Shown here: positions 1-49,207 of the stretch, piece after piece | Layout of the letters: the number at the start of each line of letters is the position of its first letter | How positions within the stretch are numbered: position 1 is the first letter of the stretch | The notes under the pieces: generated by a model | What the model was told of the DNA's origin: nothing | The model's input: the letters and a program-made list of their open reading frames with translations, nothing else | The model's database searches: none | IMG/VR virus record: IMGVR_UViG_3300026518_000006 | Span: 1-64,000 of that record | Length of the DNA stretch: 64,000 bases | Direction: 5' to 3' (one strand) | Position numbers and translations under genes: made by a program

Positions 1-114
1 CAATTATATTTAATATCACAAAGATTAAAACATTTTATGTTTTTAGAAAATATTGAGGTTCCTGATACAGAAATTATGAATTTGAGAGATAGATATTTAG
101 AGTATTTTATTTAA
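1..114 (+). CDS. 3' end of a hypothetical protein (5'-truncated) ending in the EYFI tag
   Basis: Frame open from base 1 to TAA 112-114; ends ...NLRDRYLEYFI*. Confidence 0.75.
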   Translation, partial: QLYLISQRLKHFMFLENIEVPDTEIMNLRDRYLEYFI

Positions 115-163
115 AGTTTAAAGATAATATAATATTAAAACAATATAATAAAAAGAGGGTTTT

Positions 164-358
164 ATGAATATAGATGTGAAACTAACATACAACGATTTAA
201 AGTTATTCCTGAGTGATAAAGATGTTGAAGAAATTGAAAATTTTCCTACACCGACAATACAACAGGCTAAACAAATGAAAAAACTTTGGGAAAGAACATA
301 CGGCTCTACTCTTCTTAGAGGTGAAGATAGGGAAAGTATTATAGGGGGATTATTATGA
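164..358 (+). CDS. hypothetical protein, possibly frameshifted away from the tag-bearing tail at 355-408
   Basis: 64 aa ORF with AGAGGG RBS downstream of TATAAT-like boxes. Confidence 0.65.
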   Translation: MNIDVKLTYNDLKLFLSDKDVEEIENFPTPTIQQAKQMKKLWERTYGSTLLRGEDRESIIGGLL

Positions 359-408
359 TGAAGCCATATTTAAAAGTCCTAAAAGAATACCCTGAACTGT
401 TTATATAA
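355..408 (+). CDS. 17-aa micro-ORF MMKPYLKVLKEYPELFI (tag-only peptide, or frameshifted tail of 164..358)
   Basis: Hand translation; ATGA overlap with upstream stop; AGGGGG RBS-like at 343-348. Confidence 0.5.
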   Translation: MMKPYLKVLKEYPELFI

Positions 409-423
409 GAAGGATAATAAAAA

Positions 424-714
424 ATGAAAAATATAGAAAACGCCCCGTTTAGTGTAGGTTTAACAGTATATCACATAAAAGAGTTTAAGATAACAGAGTT
501 TATTGTGTTTAAACAGAGCAATAATTTTTTTATGGATATATTGGGGAATAGATATTCTAAAAAGAAGTGTTTTTCTGAGAAAAAATACGCTGAGTTTGAA
601 GTATATAAAAATATTAAAAGATTGCTGAATGATAACAAACTTACATTTGAAATGATTGATTCAATCAGAGAAAAGTATAATGAGTACAATAAGACAACAA
701 AACAAATAACATAA
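424..714 (+). CDS. hypothetical protein
   Basis: 96 aa ORF, AAGGA RBS, within a tightly packed operon. Confidence 0.7.
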   Translation: MKNIENAPFSVGLTVYHIKEFKITEFIVFKQSNNFFMDILGNRYSKKKCFSEKKYAEFEVYKNIKRLLNDNKLTFEMIDSIREKYNEYNKTTKQIT

Positions 715-723
715 AGGATAACA

Positions 724-1125
724 ATGGATGATTTTATTAAATACAGAAATGCCCTGAATAATAACTATACAAATTATAATATCACTTACGACAAATATGA
801 GATTAAGTATTTACTTAGCCTTGGTAAAAAAGTTGAGATTATCGAAGTAAAAAAGTATGAATACTCAGACAAAAATACAGAAAAACTTATCGTTAATGGC
901 GTTATCCCTATTTATTTGGGTTGGAGAAAGACATTTAGAGGGGTTGATGATGGTGCAAAATATGGCGTGTATGTGGATAAAAATGATGTTTTAGCTGATA
1001 TTGTGGAGTATTATAAAATCAAGAAGTTGTTATTGAAGAAGTATAAAAAGAACTATGACAATACATTGAAATATATTAAAGATATAGAAGAGGTTATGAA
1101 AGGAAATGAGGAGTATATGATATGA
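724..1125 (+). CDS. hypothetical protein with C-terminal tag (EEYMI)
   Basis: 133 aa ORF with RBS; ATGA-coupled to next gene. Confidence 0.75.
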   Translation: MDDFIKYRNALNNNYTNYNITYDKYEIKYLLSLGKKVEIIEVKKYEYSDKNTEKLIVNGVIPIYLGWRKTFRGVDDGAKYGVYVDKNDVLADIVEYYKIKKLLLKKYKKNYDNTLKYIKDIEEVMKGNEEYMI

Positions 1126-1496
1126 TTATTCAGTCTAATAAAGAGATAAAAATATTTTACAACCATTTTGTTGCTGAAGAATTGAATGAAGATGGGTCGC
1201 CAAAATACCAACCACCAACACCTCCTCATAAGATTGACTCTGAAGTGGATAGTTTTGTCCTGAGTAAATCTTTCATTCCTAAAGAGTTGCACATTAAGAT
1301 GGTTCCTGATTATTCAGTTAATGGTGATATAGATAACAGAGAGTATTTTTATGAGCTACACTTAATAGATTATACTATTACCAGTAGAAATTTACAGTTT
1401 ATCAGAATGTTGCTCAAAGTTATAGCTGATTATAGAGCGGAAAAAATTGACTATGATTATAATATTATTGAAAATTACCCCCAAATGTTTGTGTAG
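1122..1496 (+). CDS. hypothetical protein with C-terminal tag (YPQMFV)
   Basis: 124 aa ORF coupled to upstream gene. Confidence 0.75.
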   Translation: MIIQSNKEIKIFYNHFVAEELNEDGSPKYQPPTPPHKIDSEVDSFVLSKSFIPKELHIKMVPDYSVNGDIDNREYFYELHLIDYTITSRNLQFIRMLLKVIADYRAEKIDYDYNIIENYPQMFV

Positions 1497-1504
1497 GGTG
1501 AACA

Positions 1505-1826
1505 ATGTCCGACTTAGAAAAAAATAAGCTTGTTGAGGGTGGTGTATATAGCGTAGATTTTAGTGACTATAGTTTTAGTAGTGAAATAAGCCAAAAAAAA
1601 GAAATCTGTAATTCACATAAGAAGTATCAAAGAAGATAGTTTTATATTTGTATTTGTTATAACAAATAATAATCAACTGAATCCTAATTTTAAGCGTCTG
1701 CAAGCTAAATCCAAAAATTTAAAAATGAGGTATTTAGGGATAAATACAAAAACCGACTCTAATATTAAAACATACCCATTAATACAACAAGAAATAATAA
1801 ACAATTATCCTGAAATTTTAATTTAG
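1505..1826 (+). pseudogene. frameshifted hypothetical gene with C-terminal tag (YPEILI)
   Basis: ATG 1505; A8 run 1593-1600; removing one A gives a continuous frame ending NNYPEILI* at 1826. Confidence 0.7.
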
Positions 1827-1877
1827 TTTTGCTTTATTCGACTACCCATCTATATTTAAAGCTATATTAAATATTAA

Positions 1878-2231
1878 TTGTGGTACACTTTTATAAAAGA
1901 GATAGGGGTGTTTATGATAAAAGAACTAATTCCAAACAAAATATACTATAGAGGTAATACAAAACCACCATTTTATACAGAAGAAATGGCTACTGTGATA
2001 AATGATGATGGAACTTTTGGGGATGCAACCCATCCCCGTATAAACGCTATTGAGATAGCTTTAAAGTATTGGTGTGAAACAAAAGAAGAAGCAATAGAAA
2101 ATATGATTTCTTATTACTTTACTTTGCGTAATTACAAAGAAGATTTTAATAATAAATCAGATGCGTATAGGGATTTTGTTAACGATATGAAAGAGTATCT
2201 TATTAAACAACACCCTGAGTATTTAGTATAA
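1878..2231 (+). CDS. hypothetical protein with C-terminal tag (HPEYLV); likely start 1914
   Basis: ORF track; AGGGG RBS before ATG 1914. Confidence 0.75.
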   Translation: MWYTFIKEIGVFMIKELIPNKIYYRGNTKPPFYTEEMATVINDDGTFGDATHPRINAIEIALKYWCETKEEAIENMISYYFTLRNYKEDFNNKSDAYRDFVNDMKEYLIKQHPEYLV

Positions 2232-2257
2232 AATATCATAAAAATTGAGAGGATAAA

Positions 2258-2620: not shown

Positions 2621-2967
2621 ATGAAATTGACAATCAATAACATTTCTATAGTAGATATGCCTATAAAAATAAACAATATCAACGAGCTTAGGCTATTTGC
2701 ACAACTAATAGAAGTTGATTATGATGAATATTTTAAACTTTACAAAGAAGTGGAGATAGAAACATCAAATGTAAGCGATAGGCATTATATGTTTCCTATG
2801 TTGGTTATGGTCAAAAAGAGACATTTTCACGAGAGGTTATGTATGAATTACTTCACAACCCGTATTATCCAACCAAAAAAGAAATGGAATTGTACAACTC
2901 AAAACATTGGCATAAGTACATAGAATTAAAGTGTTTTATTAATAAAGAAATGGAGTACTTCATATGA
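2621..2967 (+). pseudogene. frameshifted hypothetical gene with C-terminal tag (MEYFI)
   Basis: 0-frame stops at 2923; -1 frame is open from 2783 and ends KEMEYFI* at 2967 with an ATGA overlap onto the next gene. Confidence 0.65.
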
Positions 2968-3275
2968 ATTTAATTTTATCCAATCAATTCTGTGAAGAAT
3001 ATAAAAACAAAAAAGAAATATTACATAAAGGTGATATTGTTATTTATAAAGATATAGATACAAAGAGATGGGAAAACTATATTGTAATAGGAAAAGTTGT
3101 ATATACAAGTGCAATTAAAAGCGATAAAGTTAGAATTTTGGCTATTAAGTCATTTGGAAATGATAACTTGAATATGATTTCGGATTATGGGTATGTTATA
3201 ACTAAAAAAATGATAATGTATAAGATAATAGATTTTGAGTTATTTCTTGAAAATAATTCAGAGCATTTTATATAG
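2964..3275 (+). CDS. hypothetical protein, paralogue family (FCEEYK...KGDxV), tag SEHFI
   Basis: N-terminus similar to 3285 and 3605 ORFs. Confidence 0.75.
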   Translation: MNLILSNQFCEEYKNKKEILHKGDIVIYKDIDTKRWENYIVIGKVVYTSAIKSDKVRILAIKSFGNDNLNMISDYGYVITKKMIMYKIIDFELFLENNSEHFI

Positions 3276-3284: not shown

Positions 3285-3608
3285 ATGATTATATCAGATA
3301 AATTCTGTGAAGAATATAAATCACAACAAATTAAAAAAGGCGATTATGTGGTTTATAGGTATGAGGATGGTATAGCCCGATATTTAGATGAAGATTATCA
3401 CGAGTACCCTTTTTGTTTGATATATGGGGTAATTGTGTCGGTTTCTCCATTAAAAATAAAAGAGATATGTGTTGTGGGTGGCAAACTCCCTGATGGTCAA
3501 ACATTATGGTCTGATGAATTAGGGATAAGTTTAGATAACAGAAAGATAAAATATGTTATAATAGACAATATTTTGTTTGAACAAACTAATGCGGAGTATT
3601 TTGTATGA
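3285..3608 (+). CDS. hypothetical protein, paralogue family, tag AEYFV
   Basis: ISDKFCEEYK...KKGDYVVY. Confidence 0.75.
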   Translation: MIISDKFCEEYKSQQIKKGDYVVYRYEDGIARYLDEDYHEYPFCLIYGVIVSVSPLKIKEICVVGGKLPDGQTLWSDELGISLDNRKIKYVIIDNILFEQTNAEYFV

Positions 3609-3913
3609 TTAAGTTTAATAAATTTGGTGTAGAAAAATACAACAATCAAAGGCTAAACAAAAATGATTGGATTATTTATCCTGTATGTAATGGGGAATCA
3701 CCTTATTATTTTAATAATGATTGTTGTTTTATGGTGAGTAAAATCAAAAAAGTAAATGTAGATGCAGTAAAAGCTAAAGAATATGTGCCATTGGGTAGAC
3801 TACCTAAAAATCAAAAAAAGTTTAAAAAAACATTAGTGCATAAAAATGAAATTCTATTTATCATAGCTGATTATAAACTATTCATAAAAAATAACGCAGA
3901 GTATTTTGTATAA
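3605..3913 (+). CDS. hypothetical protein, paralogue family, tag AEYFV
   Basis: KFGVEKYN...KNDWIIY; ATGA coupling. Confidence 0.75.
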   Translation: MIKFNKFGVEKYNNQRLNKNDWIIYPVCNGESPYYFNNDCCFMVSKIKKVNVDAVKAKEYVPLGRLPKNQKKFKKTLVHKNEILFIIADYKLFIKNNAEYFV

Positions 3914-3943: not shown

Positions 3944-4288
3944 ATGAAGTGGCTTTTAACTATGGAGGGGGATAAACCCGCCATTTACAGGATTGTAGAT
4001 GAATTCGATGGCTCATATAAAATAGAAGAGAAAAAATACCAATATTACTCTTTCAAATATATAAAGAAACATAGACCAGTAAAACTCTTTAGAACCAAGG
4101 CTTTGGCTACAAAATATATGCGTAAAATAATACCTTTAATACCAAAGGCATTCGAAGAAGATGAAACTATTAAACAGAAAAAAACTGAAATCAAAAAACT
4201 TCAAAACGAATTAAGAGAATACAAGGAGCAAATTCGACACACATTAATTAAAAGAGCTGATAAAGTGTTTCCTGAGTATTTTATATGA
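3944..4288 (+). CDS. hypothetical protein with C-terminal tag (FPEYFI)
   Basis: 114 aa ORF. Confidence 0.75.
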   Translation: MKWLLTMEGDKPAIYRIVDEFDGSYKIEEKKYQYYSFKYIKKHRPVKLFRTKALATKYMRKIIPLIPKAFEEDETIKQKKTEIKKLQNELREYKEQIRHTLIKRADKVFPEYFI

Positions 4289-4596
4289 GAACTACAAAAT
4301 TAAAAACAAACACCACCTATTATGTTTGGCATTCAAAATACCCATTTTATAAAGAAGTGGTAATACTTGGTTTTAGTCACGATAACACAAGGTATTATAC
4401 AAAAAAGAAAGAAAAATATGCTATGGTCAGAAATGCTGAAATAACTTTCAAAGATACTAAAGAGCAGGCTATAGCCGATACAGTTAGGAGATATTTTTAT
4501 TATAAACACACAGAAACAGACAGAACTTATTTTCAAGACGAGTTTTTAGAAGAAGTAGAAAAATATACGGACAATTTGCTTGAGTTCTTTGTGTGA
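4285..4596 (+). CDS. hypothetical protein with C-terminal tag (LEFFV)
   Basis: 103 aa ORF with ATGA coupling. Confidence 0.75.
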   Translation: MRTTKLKTNTTYYVWHSKYPFYKEVVILGFSHDNTRYYTKKKEKYAMVRNAEITFKDTKEQAIADTVRRYFYYKHTETDRTYFQDEFLEEVEKYTDNLLEFFV

Positions 4597-4609: not shown

Positions 4610-4899
4610 ATGAAACTGATGTTGATATTTCATCATAAAGATTGGTTCTCTAAACGATTTTTTAAAGATAGCGATGGTTGTTTTTGGGAAACAGAAACAT
4701 TAAGGAATGATTTTGAAATAGACAAAATGTTTTCATCACATTTAGAAAGTGAAGAGTTATATCCATCTATATGCCAAGAACTTCAAGGAGATTGTATTAT
4801 TATTGATAGTGATGATTTTAACCAAAAAATATATCAAGCTAAAATGTGGGGCATAAAAAAGTTGTAAATTCTGAGGAACATCCTCAATATTTCATATAA
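4610..4899 (+). pseudogene. frameshifted hypothetical gene with C-terminal tag (HPQYFI)
   Basis: 0-frame stops at 4867; one extra A in the A6 run 4855-4860 (ATA AAA AAG) reads on to VVNSEEHPQYFI* at 4899. Confidence 0.7.
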
Positions 4900-6808: not shown

Positions 6809-7366
6809 ATGAGAAAAAACAAAATAAGAAAAATTAAAAAGCAACAACTAAAAACAAAAAGCAAAATTCTAAAAGAGAAACAAGAAACACTCAAAACCTA
6901 TAAGCTAAATTCAGAATATAAAGAGGAAACCCCCAACTTTAATTTTTATGATTATTTTTCAAAATATCTAATAAAAGAAATAAGTGATGATATTACTAAC
7001 AATACTGTCACTTATACTCCTCTGTCAGAAATTGAAAATATTGAAGTAAGTTTCACTTTTGACACTTCAGCATTTCTAAGCGTATACAATGATGATATTC
7101 TTGGTAGTCTTACTGATAGAGATAAAAAGAAAATGAAAGTTTCTGAAACATTGGATGAATATGATAAAGATATAGAACGGCTTCAAAAAATTAAGTACAG
7201 TCTTCCAAATAAATATGGAGGTAGGTCAAATAATAAAAAAAAATTTAGTGGCTATGAAGATAGAAGTAGAATAGCCAATGAAGAAATCAGATTAGATAAA
7301 AAAATCAAAAAATTAATAAAAGAAAAGGAAAATTTCTATAATGAGCACCTTGAATACTTCATATAA
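6809..7366 (+). CDS. hypothetical protein with C-terminal tag (HLEYFI)
   Basis: 185 aa basic/coiled-coil ORF. Confidence 0.75.
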   Translation: MRKNKIRKIKKQQLKTKSKILKEKQETLKTYKLNSEYKEETPNFNFYDYFSKYLIKEISDDITNNTVTYTPLSEIENIEVSFTFDTSAFLSVYNDDILGSLTDRDKKKMKVSETLDEYDKDIERLQKIKYSLPNKYGGRSNNKKKFSGYEDRSRIANEEIRLDKKIKKLIKEKENFYNEHLEYFI

Positions 7367-7604
7367 TTTTCCTTTGACTGTTGATGAAAGAGAAATGTTG
7401 TTAGAAAAAGCCAAAACAAATATATTGGTAATTAAATATGTTAAAAAAGACATAGAAAAACACAAAGAAAGAGAAAAGTTAATCAAGAATTATTTAGAAG
7501 AGAGAGCTTGGGGCAAAAAACTACAAGCTCTTGAGAATAAATTAAATGATTTTGAAAAAGAACTCCAAGAGGTAATTGATAAAGCTCCTGAGCTCTTTAT
7601 TTGA
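7341..7604 (+). CDS. hypothetical coiled-coil protein with C-terminal tag (APELFI)
   Basis: 87 aa ORF. Confidence 0.7.
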   Translation: MSTLNTSYNFPLTVDEREMLLEKAKTNILVIKYVKKDIEKHKEREKLIKNYLEERAWGKKLQALENKLNDFEKELQEVIDKAPELFI

Positions 7605-12721: not shown

Positions 12722-12840
12722 AATTTTCTAAAATCTTTAAAAGTCCTCAAAAAGTCCTCAAAACACACAAAAAATCTCTAAAACTACTTGACTTCTATTA
12801 AAGATTATTATATAATTAGGTATAAAAAGAGATAAAGGAC
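12722..12840 (+). promoter_or_regulatory. dispersed promoter cassette (palindrome degenerate)
   Basis: CTCAAA repeats; TTGACT 12788-93, TATAAT 12811-16; AAAGGA. Confidence 0.8.
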
Positions 12841-12844: not shown

Positions 12845-13573
12845 ATGACATTTAAAGACCTCTATGGAGACAAATCAAATGAAGTCTATTATGGAGACCT
12901 TAATATCTCTGATAAAGGATTAACTTCATTAGAGGGTTGTTATAAAAAAGTTGAGGGCAATTTTGATTGTAGTTATAACAAAATAACTTCATTTAAGTAC
13001 TGTCCTGATATTAGTGGTGACTTTTATTGTAATAGAAACAACATAGCTGCATTTAAGTTTTGTCCTGATGTTGAGGGTGATTTTGATTGTAGTTATAACA
13101 AAATAACTTCCTTTAAGTACTGTCCTGATGTTAAGGGTGACTTTTATTGTAATGGAAACAACATAGCTTCATTTGAATACTGTCCTGATATTAGTGGTGA
13201 CTTTAATTGTAGTGATAATCAAATAACTTCATTTAAGTTTTGTCCTGATGTTGAGGGTGATTTTGATTGTTATAATAACAAAATAACTTCCTTTGAATAC
13301 TGTCCTGATATTAGTGGTGACTTTAATTGTAGTGATAATCAAATAACTTCATTTAAATACTGTCCTGATATTGAGGGTAATTTTTATTGTAGTAGAAACA
13401 AAATAACTTCCTTTAAGTTTTGTCCTGATATTAAGGGTAATTTTAATTGTAATCATAATCAAATAACCTCATTTGAAAACAAATACTATTACCCTAATGT
13501 AGAGTTAGACAAAGACATTAAACAAAAATATATTGAGTTCGGTAAAAAATATTTTCCTCAGTATTTTATTTGA
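12845..13573 (+). CDS. leucine-rich-repeat protein 1 (8 x 20-aa modules), tag PQYFI
   Basis: Repeat [KQN]I[TA]SF[KE][YF]CPD[IV]xG[DN]FxCxxN; 60-bp DNA repeats. Confidence 0.9.
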   Translation: MTFKDLYGDKSNEVYYGDLNISDKGLTSLEGCYKKVEGNFDCSYNKITSFKYCPDISGDFYCNRNNIAAFKFCPDVEGDFDCSYNKITSFKYCPDVKGDFYCNGNNIASFEYCPDISGDFNCSDNQITSFKFCPDVEGDFDCYNNKITSFEYCPDISGDFNCSDNQITSFKYCPDIEGNFYCSRNKITSFKFCPDIKGNFNCNHNQITSFENKYYYPNVELDKDIKQKYIEFGKKYFPQYFI

Positions 13574-18274: not shown

Positions 18275-18691
18275 ATGACATACAAAGACCTCATCAACAA
18301 AATTGAATCAAAAAATTACACACTCACTAAACTATCACAAAAAATTGAAAAAGAACACGCTATAGCTACGGCAATTAGACGAACACTAAAAACTCTCTTT
18401 TTAGAAGCTGTCGAAAAATCAGGCAAAAAATATATTGGTTTATATGAAATGGGGGAAATCTATATGGAACAACCATATAACTTTCGTATAGGAATGAGCC
18501 TTAGTGAGTTTAGAGATAACCTGAAATCTATTATATCAAAAGAAACATCTTTGGATATTTTTTATCACGAAAATATAGAAGGGCTTTACAATATGTCTGT
18601 TAGTTTGTATAAATTTAGGGCTTACCGTGATGTTCTTATTTCAAAACTTAATATATTAGATTACAATTATTTCAACGCTGAGGAGTTATAA
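18275..18691 (+). CDS. hypothetical protein
   Basis: 138 aa; AAAGGA RBS. Confidence 0.7.
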   Translation: MTYKDLINKIESKNYTLTKLSQKIEKEHAIATAIRRTLKTLFLEAVEKSGKKYIGLYEMGEIYMEQPYNFRIGMSLSEFRDNLKSIISKETSLDIFYHENIEGLYNMSVSLYKFRAYRDVLISKLNILDYNYFNAEEL

Positions 18692-19620
18692 TGTATTGCG
18701 TATATTGTGGGGACTATTTTTCTAATAACAAGTCTCTTGTAAACCATAGGAAAATTTGTAAATTGAACCCGAAAAGTGATACAGCAAAAGAAAGAGAAAC
18801 TAACAAAAAAGAAGAAGAATATCTCAATATTGTCAATAAAATAGAAAGCTTTAATGATATCATTAAAACTGTTGATGAGTATATGGCTGAGAGAGGGTAT
18901 GTAGTTCATTGGGAATCAATTCCATCTAATTTTAGTATAGATATAAATCACTACGAAAAAACTGTATCTAACAATAAAAAGACACAAAATGTTGGGTGGA
19001 AAGGTAATTGGAAAGGCAAAATCGAAAGAATACCTGATTTTAAAGGAGATAATTACAGAAGATGTAGTTTTTGGGATATAAATGGCGATATGTCGGGAAT
19101 ATACGATTTAAAATTCCTCCGTACAAACGGTGGTTCTTGGGGGAGTAGTTTTAGTGGAGAAGGTTATATTCTGCTAAATGATTTTCCTAAACTTATTAAA
19201 AAATATGAAAAACAGGCATCAAAAACTAAAATTAAGCAAGATTTGTCTGAAATAACAATTAGATTGGACAAACTTTATCAAAATAGAGAAAATGAGTACA
19301 TAAAAAATGACGAACTCAAAATAAAAGCTCACGAGATACAACAAAAAATGAGAAAAAATTTGGAAAATTTATCCACAGTTATAAGAAAAAGAGAGACTAC
19401 ACTTAGAAATAAGTTCAGAAATGAAACAACAATCCCATTGCCATCAATAGAGGATGATTTTCAAAATCTTAGTGGATATATGGAGCTAAAAAATAAATTT
19501 GCTTCAAATGAAAAAGTGGCTCTTGATGATGATGTAATCAAAGACGCTATCAAAGACCTTGAAGGTGTATATGCTGAATACAAGGCATTTACAAACGAAT
19601 ATTCAGAATTTTTTATATAG
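18691..19620 (+). CDS. hypothetical protein with N-terminal C2H2-like zinc finger, tag SEFFI
   Basis: CVYCG...L.NHRKIC; paralogue of 21723..22383. Confidence 0.75.
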   Translation: MYCVYCGDYFSNNKSLVNHRKICKLNPKSDTAKERETNKKEEEYLNIVNKIESFNDIIKTVDEYMAERGYVVHWESIPSNFSIDINHYEKTVSNNKKTQNVGWKGNWKGKIERIPDFKGDNYRRCSFWDINGDMSGIYDLKFLRTNGGSWGSSFSGEGYILLNDFPKLIKKYEKQASKTKIKQDLSEITIRLDKLYQNRENEYIKNDELKIKAHEIQQKMRKNLENLSTVIRKRETTLRNKFRNETTIPLPSIEDDFQNLSGYMELKNKFASNEKVALDDDVIKDAIKDLEGVYAEYKAFTNEYSEFFI

Positions 19621-19919: not shown

Positions 19920-20137
19920 TTTATTTAATTAAGATATCGGAAGGATATAAAATAGTTGAGGGAAAATGCAATACTAACACTGTATGGTATGATGTTTTTG
20001 GGTCAAATAGACACTACTTTTACACTTATATTGAAGATTGAGAAAAGAAAGAGTTCAGCACATTTGATATAGTGGACAAAACAACATCAAAAAGTATAGA
20101 TTTTGCAAAGAAAAAATGGGCTGAGTATTTAATATAA
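19916..20137 (+). pseudogene. small gene with in-frame TGA (20039-41), tag WAEYLI
   Basis: TTG start after AAGGA; the same frame continues past TGA to KKKWAEYLI*. Confidence 0.6.
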
Positions 20138-20159: not shown

Positions 20160-20270
20160 ATGGGTCAAGATTGGATGTTATTGGTTTTTATTGTGGGTTA
20201 TGCGATTTTTATTTTTGGTATGAGTTGGCTATGTAATCATATGAATTGGTGTAAAGATATATTGGAGTGA
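20160..20270 (+). CDS. 36-aa single-pass membrane protein
   Basis: AAGGA RBS; MGQDWMLLVFIVGYAIFIFGMSWL... Confidence 0.55.
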   Translation: MGQDWMLLVFIVGYAIFIFGMSWLCNHMNWCKDILE

Positions 20271-20272
20271 AA

Positions 20273-21001
20273 ATGACATTTAAAGACCTCTATGGAGACA
20301 AATCAAATGAAGTCTATTATGGAGACCTTAATATCTCTGATAAAGGATTAACTTCATTAGAGGGTTGTTATAAAAAAGTTGAGGGCAATTTTTATTGTAG
20401 TAGAAACAAAATAACTTCATTTGAGTATTGTCCTGATATTAAGGATAACTTTTATTGTAATGGAAACAAAATAACCTCATTTAAGTTTTGTCCTGATGTT
20501 GAGGGCAATTTTTATTGTAGTAGAAACAAAATAACTTCATTTGAGTATTGTCCTGATATTAAGGGTGATTTTTATTGTAGTGGAAATCAAATAACTTCCT
20601 TTGAGTATTGTCCTGATATTAAGGGTGATTTTTATTGTAGGGGAAACAAAATAACTTCCTTTGAGTATTGTCCTGATGTTAAGGGTAGCTTTAATTGTAG
20701 AGATAATCAAATAACTTCCTTTGAGTATTGTCCTGATATTAAGGGTGATTTTTATTGTAGGGGAAACAAAATAACTTCATTTAAATACTGTCCTGATATT
20801 AAGGGTAACTTTTATTGTAGTGGAAATCAAATAACTTCCTTTGAGTATTGTCCTGATATTAGTGGTGACTTTAGTTGTCGTAATAACAAAATAACTTCCT
20901 TTGAAAACGAGTATTACTATCCTAATGTAGAGTTAGACAAAGACATTAAACAAAAATATATTGAGTTCGGTAAAGAACACTTTCCTCAGTACTTTATTTG
21001 A
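20273..21001 (+). CDS. leucine-rich-repeat protein 2 (8 x 20-aa modules), tag PQYFI
   Basis: Caps essentially identical to 12845 copy; different module order. Confidence 0.9.
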   Translation: MTFKDLYGDKSNEVYYGDLNISDKGLTSLEGCYKKVEGNFYCSRNKITSFEYCPDIKDNFYCNGNKITSFKFCPDVEGNFYCSRNKITSFEYCPDIKGDFYCSGNQITSFEYCPDIKGDFYCRGNKITSFEYCPDVKGSFNCRDNQITSFEYCPDIKGDFYCRGNKITSFKYCPDIKGNFYCSGNQITSFEYCPDISGDFSCRNNKITSFENEYYYPNVELDKDIKQKYIEFGKEHFPQYFI

Positions 21002-25360: not shown

Positions 25361-25692
25361 TGTGGGCGAATTTAAAATATAGAGATGTTTTTTATTTTAA
25401 AAGGAATAAGTTTGATGGTGAATCCACCTCATATATTGCTTTAGTACTAAATACATCAAAGCAGAAAAAATCAATAACAATTTCTATAATTTTGGAAGAT
25501 AACCAAATTAAAAATACATATAACCATCCTGAAACACTATCATTAGGAGATTTATATATGGACACAAACATTGAATTTTTAAAATTAATAGGGGCACTGA
25601 AAAATCAAGATGTAAAACATTTCAAAGAGTACCCTATTAAAAAATGGATTAATGAAGTATTTTCAAAAGAGTACCCCGAATACTTAGTGTAA
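25357..25692 (+). CDS. hypothetical protein with C-terminal tag (YPEYLV)
   Basis: 111 aa; GTGA coupling. Confidence 0.75.
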   Translation: MMWANLKYRDVFYFKRNKFDGESTSYIALVLNTSKQKKSITISIILEDNQIKNTYNHPETLSLGDLYMDTNIEFLKLIGALKNQDVKHFKEYPIKKWINEVFSKEYPEYLV

Positions 25693-27471: not shown

Positions 27472-28299
27472 ATGAAGTTATTTAAAACAAACAAAAATAA
27501 AAAAGAACATAAAAAACACCAAAATGAAGTTGTAGCCACACCAATTAGTATGCCTAATATTATGGGTTCTGATAATATCATTGAAAGTGACACACATACA
27601 TTAATAAGTGTGGAACAGCCCGCTGAAATGTTGCCTTTAATGGGCGAAGACGGCTCTATTCTACAAGGAATTTACCAAGAACAGCCTCAATTTACGCTTT
27701 ATAAGTTGTATTTGTCTGATTTTGAAGATGAAAGCAGACACGGGCTTCACAAAATAATCAGTAAACTACAAGAAGCAAATCCTGAAGATGTATTGGAGCT
27801 CCACATTGCAGGACACGGGGGATATATTTCCGAAGGTCTTGCTTTTTACAATCTGATTAGTTCTTTGTTTAGAGGGAGAACATCAGCCTATTTGACATAT
27901 GGGTATAGTATGAATGCTTTAGCCTTTTTATTCGCTGATGAAAGAATTGTTTATGAACACAGTGAAATTATGTTCCATACATATTCAGCAGGCTTTGGAG
28001 GAAAGCGTGATGATATTCTTTCTCAAATAGCACATACAGATAAGCATCTTCAAAAGTTCTTCAAAAAGATTTTGAGCCCATATTTTTCAGAAGAAGAAAT
28101 ACAGTCTATGGGGTCAAACAAAGACTTTTGGCTTAACTCACACGAGATGTTAGTTCGTGGTATTGCCACAGGAATAATCATTGATGGAGAGTATCTTAGT
28201 AGAGATGACTATTTTAAAAAATATAAGAAAAATGGAAAATTGAGAAAAAAATGGCTTAAAGAAAATAAGGAAAATAAAGATGGGCAAAGTACTGTATGA
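27472..28299 (+). CDS. ClpP-like serine protease
   Basis: IAGHGG, YSMNA (catalytic Ser), SEIMFHT (catalytic His), DFWL. Confidence 0.75.
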   Translation: MKLFKTNKNKKEHKKHQNEVVATPISMPNIMGSDNIIESDTHTLISVEQPAEMLPLMGEDGSILQGIYQEQPQFTLYKLYLSDFEDESRHGLHKIISKLQEANPEDVLELHIAGHGGYISEGLAFYNLISSLFRGRTSAYLTYGYSMNALAFLFADERIVYEHSEIMFHTYSAGFGGKRDDILSQIAHTDKHLQKFFKKILSPYFSEEEIQSMGSNKDFWLNSHEMLVRGIATGIIIDGEYLSRDDYFKKYKKNGKLRKKWLKENKENKDGQSTV

Positions 28300-28495
28300 T
28301 TTAAATACAAATAGTGGAAATAGTGGTGGTATTGTTAGTACAACAATACCATTAACTACAACATCAGATACAGTAGCATTTCAATCTGATACAGGTGTTA
28401 GAATAGACATTGTACAACTACAAAAAAAAGTAGAAGAACTTGAAGAAATGGTCAACCTCCTTATATTAGAAGTTATGCCTGAAAGAGTAGTTTAA
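28280..28495 (+). CDS. small protein with tag-like end (MPERVV)
   Basis: 71 aa; AAGGA RBS. Confidence 0.65.
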   Translation: MGKVLYDLNTNSGNSGGIVSTTIPLTTTSDTVAFQSDTGVRIDIVQLQKKVEELEEMVNLLILEVMPERVV

Positions 28496-34905: not shown

Positions 34906-35918
34906 TTAAATTATTTAATGGTGATGCTCTTGATGTAATGGATAAGCTGATAGAAAAGGGTATTAAGGTGGACGCTATCATTACTGACCCACCGTATGGT
35001 ACTACAGCCTGTTCTTGGGATTCAGTAATTCCTTTTGATGAAATGTGGAAAAGATTAAATATTATTATGAAATCTAACGGGACAATCGCTTTGTTCGGTT
35101 CTGAGCCTTTTAGTAGTGCTTTGAGGATGAGTAATATAGAAATGTTTAAGTATGATTGGATATGGGAAAAATCTCAAGGTGCAAATTTTGCATTAGTAAA
35201 ACATCAACCATATAAGGTGCACGAAATTATATCTGTATTTTATAATGACCTCAGTAAAACTACATACTCAACAAAAGCGTTTAAAGAATTGAGAAGATAT
35301 TTCAAAGACCTATTAAATTATATCGGATTACCAAAGTCAAAGATAGTAAATGATGTCGGGGGAAGAGCTGACCATTGTTTTAGAAGCGATAGCTCACAGT
35401 GGTGTATTCCATCAGAAGAAACATATAATATACTGATTAACAAATACAATATAGACAAATATAAAGGATTTAAAACATATTCGGAATTAAATTTGATATA
35501 CGAAGATGAATTAAAATCATTTAAAAAAACCTACAATTATATTACTACAGATGGAAAGAAATATATATCAGGCAAAGGGCATAGTGGGGAAACAACTGGT
35601 AATTTTAAAAAAACACAAACAATAAATAACGGGAAGAGATTTCCAAGAAGTATTCAAAAATTTGCACAAAACAAAACCATTTCCTTTCACCCAACCCAAA
35701 AGCCTGTTGAATTGATGGAATATTTGATACGAACATATACAAATGAGGGAGAATTAGTTTTAGATTTCACTATGGGTTCAGGGACAACTTTAGTCGCCTG
35801 TAAACAGCTAAATAGAAATGGTATAGGTATTGAGTTAAATGAGGACTATTTTAAAATAGCACAACAAAGAGTAGACGAAGCCGTAGAGGGTTCATCTTTA
35901 AATAAGGATGTGGAATGA
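34902..35918 (+). CDS. site-specific DNA methyltransferase (N4C/N6A, beta class) with internal insertion
   Basis: ITDPPY; HPTQKP; VLDFTMGSGTT. Confidence 0.9.
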   Translation: MIKLFNGDALDVMDKLIEKGIKVDAIITDPPYGTTACSWDSVIPFDEMWKRLNIIMKSNGTIALFGSEPFSSALRMSNIEMFKYDWIWEKSQGANFALVKHQPYKVHEIISVFYNDLSKTTYSTKAFKELRRYFKDLLNYIGLPKSKIVNDVGGRADHCFRSDSSQWCIPSEETYNILINKYNIDKYKGFKTYSELNLIYEDELKSFKKTYNYITTDGKKYISGKGHSGETTGNFKKTQTINNGKRFPRSIQKFAQNKTISFHPTQKPVELMEYLIRTYTNEGELVLDFTMGSGTTLVACKQLNRNGIGIELNEDYFKIAQQRVDEAVEGSSLNKDVE

Positions 35919-36145
35919 GTGAGCCGAAAAAAAGAGATTTTTTAGGACAAGAGATTAATGTTGGCGATTTTGCTTGTTGTTCGAGTGCTTCAGCCTCAAC
36001 AGGAATGTATATAGGAAAAGTGATAAAAATCACAGACCACAAGGTACAACTAACAGCTTTAGACGGCAAAAAACATATGAAATCTTTTGATAAAGTTTTT
36101 ATAGTAACTAAACAAATTGAGGAAATTCCTGAGATGTTGATTTAG
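35915..36145 (+). CDS. small protein with tag (IPEMLI)
   Basis: DFLGQEINVGD; 76 aa. Confidence 0.7.
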   Translation: MSEPKKRDFLGQEINVGDFACCSSASASTGMYIGKVIKITDHKVQLTALDGKKHMKSFDKVFIVTKQIEEIPEMLI

Positions 36146-37016: not shown

Positions 37017-37865
37017 ATGACATTCAAAGACCTCTATGGAGACAAATCAAATGAAGTCTATTATGGAAACCTTGATATCTCTGATAAAGGATTAACTTCA
37101 TTGGAAGGTTGTTATAAAAGAGTTGAGGGCGATTTTAATTGTAGTTATAACCAAATAACTTCATTCAAGTATTGTCCTGATATTAGTGGTGACTTTTATT
37201 GTGGTTATAATCAGATAACCTCATTTGAGTTTTGTCCTGATGTTGAGGGCAATTTTTATTGTAGTAGAAACAAAATAACTTCATTTGAGTTTTGCCCTGA
37301 TGTTAAGGGCGATTTTGATTGTAGGGGAAACAAAATAACTTCATTTAAATACTGTCCTGATGTTGAGGGTAATTTTTATTGTAGTTATAACAAAATAACT
37401 TCATTTAAGTTTTGTCCTGATATTAAGGGGAATTTTTATTGCAGTTATAATCAGATAACTTCATTCAAATGCTGTCCTGATATTAGTGGTGACTTTTATT
37501 GTGGTTATAATCAAATAACTTCATTTGAGTTTTGTCATGATATTAACGGTGTCTTTAATTGTAATGGTAATCAAATAGCTTCATTTAAATACTGTCCTGA
37601 TATTAAGGGGGATTTTTATTGTTATAATAACAAAATAGATTCCTTTAAGTATTGTCCTGATGTTAAAGGTGATATTAATTGTAGTGATAATCAAATAGCT
37701 TCATTTAAATACTGTCCTGATATTAAGGGTAATTTTAATTGTAATCATAATCAAATAACCTCATTTGAAAACAAATACTATTACCCTAATGTAGAGTTAG
37801 ACGAAGACATCAAAAAACGCTATGTTGAGTTCGGTAAAAAACACTTTCCTCAGTATTTCATATAG
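37017..37865 (+). CDS. leucine-rich-repeat protein 3 (10 x 20-aa modules), tag PQYFI
   Basis: 282 aa = 45 + 10x20 + 37. Confidence 0.9.
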   Translation: MTFKDLYGDKSNEVYYGNLDISDKGLTSLEGCYKRVEGDFNCSYNQITSFKYCPDISGDFYCGYNQITSFEFCPDVEGNFYCSRNKITSFEFCPDVKGDFDCRGNKITSFKYCPDVEGNFYCSYNKITSFKFCPDIKGNFYCSYNQITSFKCCPDISGDFYCGYNQITSFEFCHDINGVFNCNGNQIASFKYCPDIKGDFYCYNNKIDSFKYCPDVKGDINCSDNQIASFKYCPDIKGNFNCNHNQITSFENKYYYPNVELDEDIKKRYVEFGKKHFPQYFI

Positions 37866-46952: not shown

Positions 46953-46956
46953 TAAA

Positions 46957-47394: not shown

Positions 47395-48144
47395 ATGTCA
47401 TTAGGTAAAATTTTAAATGAAAATACAGAGGCAAGAGAAGCTATTTCCTCATTATTCTTGGAAGCGGGTAAATTTTTTGACCCATCAGAGTTTGATAAAG
47501 AATTCGTCAAAATTTTTAAACCTATATATGACAAATATGAGAAAAAAGATTTCTTTGGTCATAAAGCACTCTGCAAGATTTATATAGACAACTATAATAA
47601 TGCGACAATGGAGCAAAAGGCAAAATTGCCTGCACAAGGCATTAATACTGCTGAAGAATTTGCAAAAGCAAAACTTGACTTAGAGAAGATGAAGGCATAT
47701 AGAAATTGGTATGACCTATATAATGCTATTAAGTCTAAAAATATTGATGTTATTCTTTCTAAAGCAGGGTCAAAAAGAAACGAAATTTCAAGAGAGCTTT
47801 TTGGTGTACTAACAGGCATCAAAGGTGTAAAATCTATGAGTGATAAAGCTTTTAGACCTCTTGTTCAAAAGTGGGTCTCCACAAATGAAAATTATATTCC
47901 TGAAAGTATTTTAATAGAGGGTGAAATGTCTGAATAATATGCTGAAACAATCTCAAAAAGATTAGGACTAAGAAGTAAATTTGTTCTTGATTTTATGAAA
48001 AAAAATGATATTGACGGGTATAAACTACTAACTATTATGACAGGTAGAAAGCCTAAAATGCAACCTCTTGATGTAGCAACAGCATTAATGGGAACTCCCA
48101 ACAATACATACTATAAAAAGTTGATGAAGCTTTTAGGAAAATAA
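47395..48144 (+). pseudogene. putative internal head protein (MSLGKILNE) with in-frame TAA at 47935-37
   Basis: Same frame continues 68 sense codons past the TAA to stop at 48144. Confidence 0.6.
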
Positions 48145-48221
48145 AAATTAATCGGCAATTTAAGGTTATTTTAAGAGATAATCAGCTATAATTGCATTAA
48201 TAAAAATATAAAGGACAGCGT

Positions 48222-48348
48222 ATGAAATCTATGAAGATTCAAGACGCATCCACTAAAGAAGATGGTGATTTATAGTCGCTAATCTTGGGTGCGTCTTTAA
48301 ATAAACACAAGACGCACCCACCTCCAAATACAATCCAAAGGTGGGTGT
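48222..48348 (+). promoter_or_regulatory. leader with 17-codon micro-ORF and alternative hairpins, upstream of tRNA-Lys
   Basis: ORF 48222-75 with AAAGGA; repeats AAGACGCA[T/C]CCA x2 and their complement. Confidence 0.45.
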
Positions 48349-48356
48349 TATCAAAA

Positions 48357-48433
48357 GGGTGTGTAGCTCAGTTGGTAGTAGCACTCGACTTTTAATCGAG
48401 GGGTCACAGGCTCAAACCCTGTCACACCCACCA
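48357..48433 (+). tRNA. tRNA-Lys (TTT), atypical T-loop CTCAAAC
   Basis: GGGTGTG/CACACCC; CTCGA-CTTTTAA-TCGAG. Confidence 0.9.
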
Positions 48434-48436
48434 TTT

Positions 48437-48509
48437 GGCATATGTCTTTGGAGAACACCTGAACCTCATAAGTTTAGGAAATAAGGGTCAGAACCTTGAT
48501 ATGCCACCA
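48437..48509 (+). tRNA. non-canonical tRNA-like RNA with CAT anticodon
   Basis: GGCATAT/ATATGCC-ACCA; mini D-arm; 7-bp anticodon stem; T-loop GTCAGAA. Confidence 0.6.
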
Positions 48510-48563
48510 TCCTAACTAAACTCTCATAATATTACTCCACAATTTACACTCATTAAATCACAT

Positions 48564-48592
48564 TTGACTTTTTATTAAGATTATTGTATAAT
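48564..48592 (+). promoter_or_regulatory. sigma70 early promoter (cassette-type)
   Basis: TTGACT-17-TATAAT with AAGATTATTG spacer. Confidence 0.8.
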
Positions 48593-48623
48593 CTTAATAT
48601 AAACAAAAAAAGAGGGGCAAAAA

Positions 48624-48913
48624 ATGGGTCTATATGTAAATCCACCATATGATAAAAGGCAATGGCTTATTGACAACTCAGAAACAAAACCACTAAAACA
48701 GAGCGATTTCTTGCTTGATAGTGTTGCTAATGATGAATTTCTTGTAGTTCTTGTCGATAATGGTCTTTTTAATGCAGGAGGGTAGTGTACTCTGAAAGAG
48801 AGTATGTTGATTTTACATCTCCTTCGGATTCAAGACCGAAAGAGTTTTTTATTGTCAAAAAAGAAAAATTAAAACCATACTGTCAAGAGTGGGAATTATA
48901 TGTGGATGAATAG
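48624..48913 (+). pseudogene. frameshifted conserved phage protein
   Basis: MGLYVNP...LVVLVDNGLFNAGG*; one extra G at 48780-82 continues VVYSERE...DSRPKEFFIV to 48913. Confidence 0.65.
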
Positions 48914-48946
48914 AACCTATTAACCCTATTAAAAACACTTGGGTAT

Positions 48947-49207
48947 TTGCAAATGAAAAAGAAATTGAACTTTAAAAATGGCGACATCTTGTTTGTTGTA
49001 AAAAAAGGATTTGGTGCATATATATGTGCAGTGAAAGGTATATTTCAGTCACTATCTGATACATCTATAACATATAAATGTTCTGTAATATATTCAAAAA
49101 ACAAAAATAATAGTAATGAGGTGATGGTTAATCCTGAAGATATAAAAGCCTATTTAGGTGATGATATTGATGAGGCTGTTGAACAATATGCCGAATATTT
49201 TATATAA
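48947..49207 (+). CDS. small protein with C-terminal tag (YAEYFI)
   Basis: NFKNGDILFV; likely start 48953. Confidence 0.7.
   Translation: MQMKKKLNFKNGDILFVVKKGFGAYICAVKGIFQSLSDTSITYKCSVIYSKNKNNSNEVMVNPEDIKAYLGDDIDEAVEQYAEYFI

What the first reader, a model, noticed from the sequence alone, without database searches (positions are those of the whole stretch)
1..49207. A shared C-terminal peptide tag on more than 20 unrelated early phage proteins
Seen in sequence: 21 intact plus-strand ORFs end in a near-identical terminus, [PAL SE]-[EQ]-[YFHLMR]-[FLMIV]-[IV]-stop, usually after an amphipathic helix. They are 1..114 LEYFI, 724 EEYMI, 1122 PQMFV, 1878 PEYLV, 2964 SEHFI, 3285 and 3605 AEYFV, 3944 PEYFI, 4285 LEFFV, 6809 LEYFI, 7341 PELFI, 12845, 20273 and 37017 PQYFI, 18691 SEFFI, 21201 PEYII, 25007 PERFV, 25357 PEYLV, 28280 PERVV, 35915 PEMLI and 48947 AEYFI. 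About six broken genes regain the tag when repaired. Codons vary synonymously (GAG/GAA, TAT/TAC, TTT/TTC, ATA/ATT/GTG/GTA, all three stops), so selection acts on the peptide, not a DNA site. No core, structural or late gene carries it. Established analogies: C-terminal docking tails such as the T4 sliding-clamp motif on gp43/gp55/gp33, SSB tails, PDZ ligands and ssrA-type degrons. Inference: this is a plug-in system in which diverse N-terminal domains are routed by one constant tail to a shared hub (protease, clamp, RNA polymerase or export machine).
Basis: partly seen in the sequence, partly recalled or inferred. Interest (0 to 1): 0.88.

Follow-up and report, generated by a model that had tools for sequence, protein, structure and literature searches.

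The report
Shared C-terminal tail on early phage proteins
About a quarter of the small early genes of this uncultured T4-like phage, and 84 of about 357 ORFs in a distantly related cultured Vibrio phage, encode otherwise unrelated proteins that all end in the same peptide (...Pro-Glu-x-Phe-Ile-stop). It looks like an undescribed plug-in docking or degradation tag whose partner is still unknown.

Summary
In window 1-49300, 21 of 77 non-overlapping plus-strand ORFs end in [EQ]-x-hydrophobic-[ILV]-stop, against 0.6 expected (p 6e-27). No minus-strand ORF has the strict motif.

The tail is a roughly 14-residue module. It is an amphipathic helix (hydrophobic at -13 and -10, basic at -9, aromatic or His at -6) followed by Pro(-5), Glu(-4), x, Phe/Leu(-2), Ile/Val(-1).

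Selection acts on the peptide. It persists in Vibrio phage SRILMA (polymerase 27% identical), where 84 of 357 ORFs carry it (3 expected, p 2.5e-92). It also occurs in many uncultured relatives and in 91 of 147 newly retrieved remote homologues of one tagged family (Pfam DUF7205).

The carriers fall into about 79 BLAST-unrelated groups and at least two predicted folds (SH3/Tudor-like barrel, LRR). Bacterial-type LRR homologues lack the tail, so it is an appended module. Carriers are non-late ORFan genes. T4 and a Campylobacter phage lack the tail.

The function is inferred. The best guess is a shared docking or degradation tag for an AAA+ protease system, since the clade encodes ClpP-family proteases. 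No partner was shown. No description was found in the searched literature.

The parts
1..114 (+). 3' end of a tagged ORF cut by the window start; ends LEYFI
724..1125 (+). tagged ORF, 133 aa, ends EEYMI
   Evidence: no Pfam or PHROG hit
1122..1496 (+). tagged ORF, 124 aa, ends PQMFV
1878..2231 (+). tagged ORF, 117 aa, ends PEYLV
2964..3275 (+). tagged ORF, 103 aa, ends SEHFI; small beta-barrel family A (DUF7205-like)
3285..3608 (+). tagged ORF, 107 aa, ends AEYFV; family A paralogue
3605..3913 (+). tagged ORF, 102 aa, ends AEYFV; family A paralogue
3944..4288 (+). tagged ORF, 114 aa, ends PEYFI
4285..4596 (+). tagged ORF, 103 aa, ends LEFFV
6809..7366 (+). tagged ORF, 185 aa, ends LEYFI
7341..7604 (+). 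tagged ORF, 87 aa, ends PELFI; the next gene is on the opposite strand
12845..13573 (+). tagged leucine-rich-repeat protein, 242 aa, ends PQYFI; directly behind early promoter cassette 12788
18691..19620 (+). tagged ORF, 309 aa, ends SEFFI; orthologue in Vibrio phage SRILMA (23% identity) ends HPEIFI
20267..21001 (+). tagged LRR paralogue, 244 aa, ends PQYFI
21201..21716 (+). tagged ORF, 171 aa, ends PEYII; directly behind early promoter cassette 21146
25007..25360 (+). tagged ORF, 117 aa, ends PERFV
25357..25692 (+). tagged ORF, 111 aa, ends PEYLV; the next gene is on the opposite strand
28280..28495 (+). tagged ORF, 71 aa, ends PERVV; overlaps the end of the ClpP-like gene
35915..36145 (+). 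tagged ORF, 76 aa, ends PEMLI; Pfam DUF7205 member. The model is an SH3/Tudor-like barrel with a low-confidence tail
37017..37865 (+). tagged LRR protein, 282 aa, ends PQYFI. The model has a C-terminal cap helix at 263-276, then the tail; behind early promoter cassette 36960
48947..49207 (+). tagged ORF, 86 aa, ends AEYFI; last plus-strand gene before the convergent tail-sheath gene, so no downstream gene to couple to
331..408 (+). tail-ending fragment (YPELFI) out of frame with ORF 164-358
1590..1826 (+). tail-ending fragment (YPEILI), 78 codons stop to stop, first ATG late
2782..2967 (+). tail-ending fragment (EMEYFI) out of frame with ORF 2621-2923
4843..4899 (+). tail-ending fragment (HPQYFI) out of frame with ORF 4610-4867
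20042..20137 (+). tail-ending fragment (WAEYLI)
22255..22383 (+). tail-ending fragment (HLEYFI) behind a stop-riddled stretch that follows ORF 21787-22089
27472..28299 (+). divergent ClpP-family protease, no late promoter; candidate but unproven partner
12788..12816 (+). one of nine near-identical consensus sigma-70 promoter cassettes (TTGACT, 17 nt, extended -10); the others start at 4969, 10981, 12116, 13705, 21146, 36960, 37946 and 48564

Best explanation
The tail is a portable C-terminal docking peptide. It is a short amphipathic helix followed by Pro-Glu-x-Phe/Leu-Ile/Val and the free carboxylate. It has been grafted onto, or retained by, dozens of otherwise unrelated non-late accessory proteins, and it is selected at the protein level.

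Shown: its existence, its enrichment, its modularity, its restriction to non-late ORFan genes, and its conservation across distant phages.

Inferred: all carriers use the tail to engage one common, catalytic partner. My committed guess is an AAA+ unfoldase/protease system, either host ClpXP, ClpAP, Lon or FtsH, or the phage's own ClpP-family protease. The tail would then act as a shared degradation or delivery tag. The whole early accessory proteome could be handled together, for example cleared when the infection moves on.
For: Enrichment: 21 of 77 ORFs against 0.6 expected in the window. In Vibrio phage SRILMA, 84 of 357 against 3.0 expected (p 2.5e-92), and 74 of 83 PE-x-hydrophobic-[ILV] pentapeptides in that proteome lie at the very C-terminus.

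Peptide-level selection: third codon positions vary. The tail is kept in 34 SRILMA genes with no nearby downstream start, and in window genes followed by an opposite-strand gene.

Conservation: an orthologue pair at 23% identity keeps the tail. Of 147 newly retrieved remote DUF7205 homologues, 91 keep it.

Modularity: with the last 10 residues trimmed, the 84 SRILMA carriers fall into 79 BLASTP clusters, and no PHROG is shared by more than 3 of them. There are two different predicted folds. Only the 2 closest of 120 LRR homologues have the tail.

Accessibility: the tail has low pLDDT and is not docked in the DUF7205 model.

Timing: 0 of 84 tagged against 27 of 273 untagged SRILMA genes have TATAAATA within 80 nt upstream (p 7e-4). 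There are consensus early promoters in front of tagged window genes.

Protease context: the window has a ClpP-family gene. SRILMA has a true ClpP, an S49 peptidase embedded in a tagged array, and a classical-AAA unfoldase-like ATPase. In relatives that ATPase ends in the ClpP-docking-like tripeptide [IL]-G-[LF] and sits next to ClpP.

A catalytic hub suits 80-plus different clients better than a stoichiometric one (inference).
Against: No binding or turnover was tested.

The tail does not resemble known ClpX (LAA), SspB-XB or Lon degrons.

ClpP and the AAA ATPase are also present in relatives with few or no tails (L059/L086: 0 tails in 43 and 35 ORFs).

The AAA ATPase was not found on the window's contig.

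The window ClpP-like protein is only 27% identical over 88 residues to the SRILMA ClpP.

In the LRR model the helix and tail are confidently ordered (pLDDT 83-94), which is also compatible with a cis-acting cap.
Confidence: 0.35

Rival explanations
1. Adaptor library. The variable N-terminal domains (LRR, Tudor-like barrel and others) each bind a different host protein. The constant tail tethers them to a protease or other effector enzyme. The targets, not the carriers, are then destroyed or modified. This would resemble SspB tethering to ClpX, or poxvirus ankyrin/F-box proteins.
For: The architecture is a variable binding-type domain plus a constant tail. LRR and Tudor/SH3-like folds are typical protein-binding modules. 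The repertoire is large, fast-evolving and arranged in tandem arrays. Phage-encoded protease parts are present.
Against: No target or partner is known. Most carriers have no recognisable binding domain. The weak co-occurrence with ClpP and the AAA ATPase is the same as for the degron model.
Confidence: 0.15
2. Docking tail for a replication or transcription hub (phage or host sliding clamp, RNA polymerase, SSB), as with the T4 gp45-binding tails of gp43, gp33 and gp55.
For: The pattern of an acidic residue followed by hydrophobic residues at a free C-terminus is the general style of clamp- and SSB-type docking tails (established knowledge). The genes are interleaved with replication genes.
Against: The polymerases and several other replication proteins of this clade end in a different tail, acidic residues then Trp. 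Glu, not the Gln of bacterial clamp motifs, is invariant. Eighty-four different stoichiometric binders would saturate such a hub (inference). The sigma-factor homologue is untagged.
Confidence: 0.12
3. Cis-acting element. The helix plus hydrophobic hook caps the hydrophobic core of small, fast-evolving domains, or recruits a chaperonin. It would stabilise or fold them rather than route them.
For: The residues at -13, -10, -6 and -2 fall on one helical face. The helix and tail are confidently ordered as the LRR C-cap in the model. SRILMA encodes GroEL and GroES.
Against: The tail is not packed in the DUF7205 model. Near-invariant Pro-Glu across unrelated folds is not expected for a generic cap (inference). 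GroEL also occurs in tail-less relatives (L065, L075).
Confidence: 0.12
4. Capsid-targeting or export signal. The tail loads the proteins into the prohead for injection (a C-terminal counterpart of the T4 internal-protein targeting sequence), or sends them out of the cell through a type-1-like exporter.
For: The T4 IPIII targeting peptide MKTYQEFIAE contains YQEFI, a weak likeness to [YHF]PE-x-FI. T4 internal proteins are likewise unrelated proteins sharing one terminal peptide (established knowledge). Type-1 secretion signals are C-terminal and uncleaved (established knowledge).
Against: Tagged genes lack late promoters, whereas head genes have them. The T4 signal is N-terminal. Eighty-four cargo species is implausibly many. 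The SRILMA gene annotated 'ABC transporter' has no detectable relative of solved structure.
Confidence: 0.06
5. By-product of a nucleotide signal. The conserved gene end would really be the ribosome-binding site and start region of the next, translationally coupled gene, or a recombination cassette.
For: GAG, ATA and TGA are over-used in tails. GAG lies 9-12 nt before an overlapping ATG. In SRILMA, 25 of 31 ATGA overlaps involve a tagged gene.
Against: The biases concentrate in genes with a start within 12 nt. The peptide is equally intact in 34 SRILMA genes without one (mostly GAA and TAA), in 59 tagged genes without an ATGA overlap, and in window genes followed by opposite-strand genes. T4 has 11 ATGA overlaps and no tail. 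Other third positions vary freely.
Confidence: 0.03

Closest known systems
T4 capsid targeting sequence of internal proteins (IPI, IPII, IPIII)
   Same: A short terminal peptide shared by otherwise unrelated, hypervariable accessory proteins of a T4-type phage. There is weak letter similarity (YQEFI in MKTYQEFIAE).
   Different: The T4 peptide is N-terminal, is cleaved by the prohead protease, sits on a handful of head-packaged proteins, and is tied to head assembly. Here the peptide is C-terminal, on dozens of genes, with non-late expression.
ssrA tag and other C-terminal degrons; the SspB C-terminal ClpX-binding tail
   Same: A short C-terminal peptide with a hydrophobic end and free carboxylate that hands diverse proteins to one AAA+ machine. 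It has a two-part look, with an upstream recognition stretch plus terminal residues.
   Different: The sequence is unlike LAA or LRVVK. Here the tail is genetically encoded on each gene rather than added by tmRNA. No degradation has been shown.
Clamp-binding and SSB-type docking tails (T4 gp43/gp33/gp55 to gp45; bacterial QL[SD]LF; SSB and T7 gp2.5/gp4 acidic tails)
   Same: Many proteins plug into one hub through a C-terminal acidic-plus-hydrophobic peptide.
   Different: Those tails sit on replication and transcription proteins. In this clade such proteins carry a separate acidic-Trp tail, and the PE-x-FI tail is confined to ORFan accessory proteins.
Poxvirus ankyrin-repeat/PRANC (F-box-like) and similar viral adaptor families
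   Same: A large viral multigene family with a variable N-terminal binding domain (repeat proteins included) and a constant C-terminal hub-binding element.
   Different: PRANC is a folded domain of about 30-40 residues that binds Skp1 in eukaryotic hosts. Here the element is a peptide of about 14 residues in a bacterial virus, on unrelated folds. This is an analogy only.
Pfam DUF7205 (PF23835)
   Same: Window gene 35915-36145 and its relatives are listed under this family. Most members end in the tail.
   Different: DUF7205 describes one carrier family of unknown function. It does not capture that the same tail recurs on about 80 unrelated families.

Membership tests
ClpX-type C-terminal degron (ssrA-like, C-motif 1) | Last residues non-polar, ending Leu-Ala-Ala or similar, with a free carboxylate | tested here: not met
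   Tails end [FL]-[IV] preceded by invariant Glu and Pro
ClpX-type C-terminal degron (ssrA-like, C-motif 1) | Tail exposed and unstructured | tested here: inconclusive
   Low pLDDT in the DUF7205 model but pLDDT 83-94 in the LRR model
ClpX-type C-terminal degron (ssrA-like, C-motif 1) | Tail confers protease-dependent instability | not testable with these tools
   Needs reporter half-life assays
Bacterial beta-clamp or T4 gp45 binding motif | Gln at the first motif position (QL[SD]LF), or a match to the tails of the phage's own polymerase or sigma factor | tested here: not met
   Glu is 92-100% and Gln 0-8%. Polymerases end in acidic residues plus Trp
T4 capsid targeting sequence | N-terminal position, removed by the prohead protease | tested here: not met
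   The motif is at the extreme C-terminus: 74 of 83 proteome-wide occurrences
T4 capsid targeting sequence | Expression compatible with head assembly (late promoter) | tested here: not met
   0 of 84 tagged against 27 of 273 untagged genes have TATAAATA upstream; none in the window
Type 1 secretion C-terminal signal | Linked ABC exporter, membrane-fusion protein and outer-membrane factor; often Gly-rich repeats upstream of the signal | not tested
   Only noted that the SRILMA 'ABC transporter' annotation has no relative of solved structure
Pfam DUF7205 (PF23835) | Match to the family model | tested here: inconclusive
   The precomputed hit is listed for the window protein P0010 and its relatives. 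The local Pfam copy returned no hit. The family A profile unites 2964, 3285, 3605 and 35915
Leucine-rich repeat (Pfam LRR_4) for 12845, 20267 and 37017 | LRR_4 model match and solenoid fold | tested here: met
   LRR_4 scores 27.9-41.7 bits against a cut-off of 27; AlphaFold model pLDDT 93.9. The tail is not part of the family

The most novel reading that the evidence does not exclude
The tagged genes are a phage-encoded library of targeting adaptors. Each variable domain seizes a different host protein, such as a defence or housekeeping factor. The common tail plugs it into one protease or modifying machine. This would be a bacterial-virus counterpart of viral hijacking of ubiquitin ligases, using up to a quarter of the genome.
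Probability: 0.12. Interest if true: 0.95.

Novelty: new variant of a known kind. Interest (0 to 1): 0.82.

Why it matters
Most early genes of T4-type and jumbo phages are ORFans with no handle for study. A single 14-residue tail shared by about 80 of them in a cultured, tractable Vibrio phage gives one experimental handle for all of them. Peptide pull-downs, reporter fusions and tail deletions could reveal a central node of host takeover.

If the partner is a protease or unfoldase, this would be the first virus-wide encoded degradation or delivery tag in phages. It could also serve as a portable tag for synthetic biology.

It also shows that phage proteomes can use short linear motifs on a scale usually associated with eukaryotic viruses.

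Tried and rejected
- **Chance or AT-rich composition:** rejected.
- **One diverged paralogue family detectable by sequence:** not supported. There are 79 BLASTP clusters after trimming, no common PHROG or Pfam family, and two different predicted folds. Extreme divergence from one ancestor cannot be fully excluded for the roughly 100-residue members.
- **By-product of ATGA overlap or an embedded ribosome-binding site:** rejected as the main cause.
- **T4 MotA-box middle promoters:** no enrichment.
- **A strict sigma-70 promoter scan in SRILMA:** found nothing.
- **Tail in T4 (first 50 kb) and Campylobacter phage CP30A (41 kb):** absent.
- **Co-occurrence of the tail with ClpP, the AAA ATPase, MoxR or GroEL across fetched loci:** no clean correlation.
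- **Word-based homologue search for 18691-19620:** only itself.
- **Pfam, PHROG and PDB searches of larger carriers:** nothing significant.
- **Literature searches:** motif strings, Va1-like phages, phage ClpP, DUF7205 and shared C-terminal motifs all returned nothing relevant.

Full report
**What the window is.** The window is the first 64 kb of a 235,593-bp uncultured viral contig, IMGVR_UViG_3300026518_000006, with 31.7% G+C. It encodes T4-type functions: a family B DNA polymerase, helicase, tail sheath, baseplate parts and several DNA methyltransferases. Its closest cultured relatives are the roughly 195-kb Vibrio phages Va1, SRILMA, TDDLMA, pv27, phiTY18 and phiKT1024 (tail sheath 42-43% identical). 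Campylobacter phages come next. T4-type late promoters (TATAAATA) precede the structural genes and the minus-strand genes.

**Checking the observation.**
- In a six-frame scan, 24 plus-strand and 0 minus-strand ORFs of at least 40 codons end in [EQ]x[FLMIV][IV].
- Among 77 non-overlapping plus-strand ORFs in 1-49300, 21 carry the tail against about 0.6 expected (p 6e-27). Of 17 P[EQ]x-hydrophobic-[ILV] pentapeptides anywhere in those proteins, 12 are at the extreme C-terminus.
- Six further tail-ending fragments lie out of frame with, or behind stops from, an upstream ORF. They may be pseudogenes or assembly frameshifts. I did not read through them.

**Anatomy of the tail.** Fifty non-redundant tails from the window and relatives, and separately the 84 tails of SRILMA, give the same logo.
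- Position -13: hydrophobic.
- Position -10: hydrophobic (87%).
- Position -9: Lys or Arg.
- Position -6: His, Tyr, Phe or Asn.
- Position -5: Pro (72-88%).
- Position -4: Glu (92-100%, otherwise Gln).
- Position -3: variable.
- Position -2: Phe or Leu.
- Position -1: Ile or Val, then stop.

On a helical wheel, positions -13, -10, -6 and -2 share one face and Glu -4 lies opposite. The unit is therefore an amphipathic helix of about 14 residues with a proline kink and a hydrophobic free end, not just five residues.

**Peptide or DNA?** Third codon positions carry little information, and all three stop codons are used. There are real codon biases.
- GAG is over-used for the Glu: window 13 of 20 against 34% (p 0.004); SRILMA 46% against 21% (p 2e-7).
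- In SRILMA, ATA is over-used for the final Ile (68% against 22%).
- In SRILMA, TGA is over-used as the stop (42% against 22%).

These biases concentrate in the 50 SRILMA genes whose successor starts within 12 nt, 26 of them by ATGA overlap. There, GAG lies where a Shine-Dalgarno element would be, and ATA-TGA creates the next ATG. GAG is used in 28 of 50 near genes against 11 of 34 far genes (p 0.045). The peptide is equally intact in three other settings:
- the 34 'far' genes, mostly GAA and TAA;
- the 59 tagged genes without an ATGA overlap;
- window genes followed by an opposite-strand gene or a terminator (7604, 25692, 36145, 49207).

T4 has 11 ATGA overlaps in 50 kb and no tail. Selection is therefore on the peptide, with downstream translation signals written into its synonymous positions.

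**Conservation elsewhere.** This is the key result.
- In the annotated genome of Vibrio phage SRILMA (polymerase 27% identical to the window's), 84 of about 357 ORFs end in the tail. That is 3.0 expected, p 2.5e-92. Of 83 PE-x-hydrophobic-[ILV] pentapeptides in the proteome, 74 are C-terminal. Carriers have a median length of 106 residues and lie in tandem arrays.
- Tails also occur in uncultured contigs of the SRILMA-like clade, in a more distant contig (L013), and in a Logan contig (L112).
- They are absent from 41 kb of Campylobacter phage CP30A and from 50 kb of T4.
- Distribution within the SRILMA-like clade is patchy. L059/L086 (polymerase 69% identical to SRILMA) has none in 43 and 35 ORFs.
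- The 309-residue window protein 18691-19620 and its SRILMA orthologue share 23% identity and both keep the tail.

**Are the carriers related?** In the window only three small paralogue groups exist. With the last 10 residues removed, the 84 SRILMA carriers form 79 BLASTP clusters. No PHROG is shared by more than three, and most have none. Pfam finds nothing apart from LRR_4 in the three LRR genes.

One carrier family (window 2964, 3285, 3605, 35915 and relatives) is a small beta-barrel. AlphaFold2 gives an SH3/Tudor-like fold (pLDDT about 89 in the barrel). Confidence falls to 68 and then 51 over the last 13 residues, and the last three residues are below 50. This family corresponds to Pfam DUF7205. 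A full HMMER search of 1.84 billion representatives found 354 members. Of the 147 newly retrieved sequences among the best 150 hits, 91 end in the strict tail, and the tail-less ones match only the barrel.

The LRR carrier models confidently (pLDDT 93.9), with a cap helix at 263-276 followed by the tail. Of its 120 best homologues in a 5.8-billion-protein collection, only the two closest have the tail. The tail is thus an appended module found on at least two different predicted folds.

**Timing.**
- No tagged window gene has a late promoter directly upstream.
- In SRILMA, 0 of 84 tagged against 27 of 273 untagged genes have TATAAATA within 80 nt upstream (p 7e-4).
- The window carries nine near-identical consensus sigma-70 promoter cassettes. 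Three sit directly in front of tagged genes 12845, 21201 and 37017.

By analogy with T4, the carriers are early or middle accessory genes. That step is an inference.

**Mechanism.** What is shown is a modular, peptide-level, lineage-conserved C-terminal motif restricted to non-late ORFan proteins. What it binds is not shown. I favour a common catalytic partner, because 80-plus different clients would swamp a stoichiometric hub. Among catalytic partners I favour an AAA+ protease system, for these reasons:
- The window has a ClpP-family gene at 27472-28299 (Pfam 1.5e-11), immediately followed by a tagged gene.
- SRILMA has a bona fide ClpP (1.7e-47) and an S49 peptidase embedded in a tagged array.
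- SRILMA also has a classical-AAA ATPase whose nearest solved relatives are VAT, proteasomal Rpt subunits, Cdc48 and FtsH.
- In about 25 relatives this ATPase ends in K-[IL]-G-[LF]-stop, the tripeptide with which ClpX and ClpA dock on ClpP. In L041/L103 it is adjacent to ClpP.

The support is only circumstantial. These genes also occur in tail-poor relatives. The ATPase was not found on the window's contig. The tail resembles no known degron. Confidence is therefore 0.35.

**Rivals.** They are, with my confidence in each:
- an adaptor library (0.15);
- a replication or transcription hub (0.12), weakened because the polymerases here end in a distinct acidic-Trp tail;
- a cis-acting cap or chaperonin tag (0.12);
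- capsid targeting or export (0.06), weakened by non-late expression despite a faint likeness to the T4 IPIII targeting peptide;
- a nucleotide-signal by-product (0.03).

**Comparison with what is known.** The nearest precedent in phage biology is the T4 capsid targeting sequence. That is a shared terminal peptide on unrelated hypervariable proteins, but it is N-terminal, cleaved and confined to a few packaged proteins. Functionally similar designs are C-terminal degrons and adaptor tails, clamp and SSB docking tails, and the variable-domain-plus-constant-C-terminus families of large eukaryotic viruses. None of the membership tests I could run was met for these. Seven literature searches found no description of the tail, of DUF7205, or of this feature in Va1-like phages. 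That library lacks most subscription journals.

**Verdict.** This is a real, highly significant and apparently undescribed feature. I rate it a new variant of a known kind (shared terminal targeting or docking peptides), with interest 0.82.

Noticed in passing
L001:5485-6669 (SRILMA); L041:70-1812; L059:8369-9556; L086-L111: A conserved phage AAA ATPase has VAT, Rpt, Cdc48 and FtsH as its nearest solved relatives. In about 25 contigs it ends in K-[IL]-G-[LF]-stop, the tripeptide that ClpX and ClpA use to dock on ClpP. In L041/L103 it lies directly upstream of a ClpP gene. It looks like a phage-encoded unfoldase-ClpP protease that docks by a C-terminal tail, as proteasomal ATPases do.
   Followed up: partly
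window 29896-33096; L059, L013, L043, L112; SRILMA L001:9711-10727: DNA polymerases and some other proteins of this clade end in acidic residues followed by Trp (for example ...DEPW, ...LDDW, ...DLDEW). This is a second, separate C-terminal tail, reminiscent of the acidic aromatic tails of T7 gp2.5 and gp4 and of SSB.
   Followed up: partly
window 4969, 10981, 12116, 12788, 13705, 21146, 36960, 37946, 48564 (+): There are nine near-identical promoter cassettes. Each has TTGACT, a 17-nt spacer and an extended -10 TGTATAAT, followed by a conserved leader with a ribosome-binding site. They are likely strong early promoters, possibly mobile cassettes like those described in T4-type hyperplastic regions.
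   Followed up: partly
window 13574-13625 and 21002-21065: Immediately after two LRR genes, the last 13 nt of the gene (the tail-coding end plus stop) are repeated three to five times in tandem. A hairpin terminator and the promoter cassette follow.
   Followed up: no
window 24717-24998; SRILMA L081:28428-28685 (-): A small protein of 85-93 residues has a signal peptide and a lipobox (..SGC..). It is 40% identical between the two phages, which is more conserved than their polymerases (27%). It may be a phage lipoprotein, for example for superinfection exclusion.
   Followed up: no
SRILMA L081:9362-9946, L081:36995-37906, L081:13593-14702, L082:39348-40928, L082:49268-49573: The Vibrio phage encodes a true ClpP, an S49 peptidase, a MoxR-like ATPase (next to a tagged 379-residue protein), GroEL and GroES. 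These are in addition to the prohead protease beside the major head protein.
   Followed up: partly
window 8925-10423, 11132-11998, 34902-35918, 42915-43697, 44436-45446; 40314-41003, 41985-42464: There is an unusual density of DNA methyltransferase genes, one behind a ParB-like gene, together with homing and HNH endonuclease genes.
   Followed up: no
window 15802-17952: A 716-residue protein has a PhoH-like ATPase N-terminal part and a weak LAGLIDADG hit at residues 253-312. It may be an intein-containing or fused gene.
   Followed up: no
tails in window and SRILMA: Synonymous positions of the tail are used for the next gene's translation signals. GAG serves as a Shine-Dalgarno-like element and ATA-TGA creates the overlapping ATG. 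This is a tidy case of dual coding.
   Followed up: yes
L059:5579-6013, L043:6575-6979, L009:4544-4969, L112:407-811: Orthologous proteins in tail-poor relatives end in ..P-[DI]-[ND]-F-[KL]-K/G/E/D. This looks like a tail extended by one or two residues, and may be a decayed or variant form.
   Followed up: no
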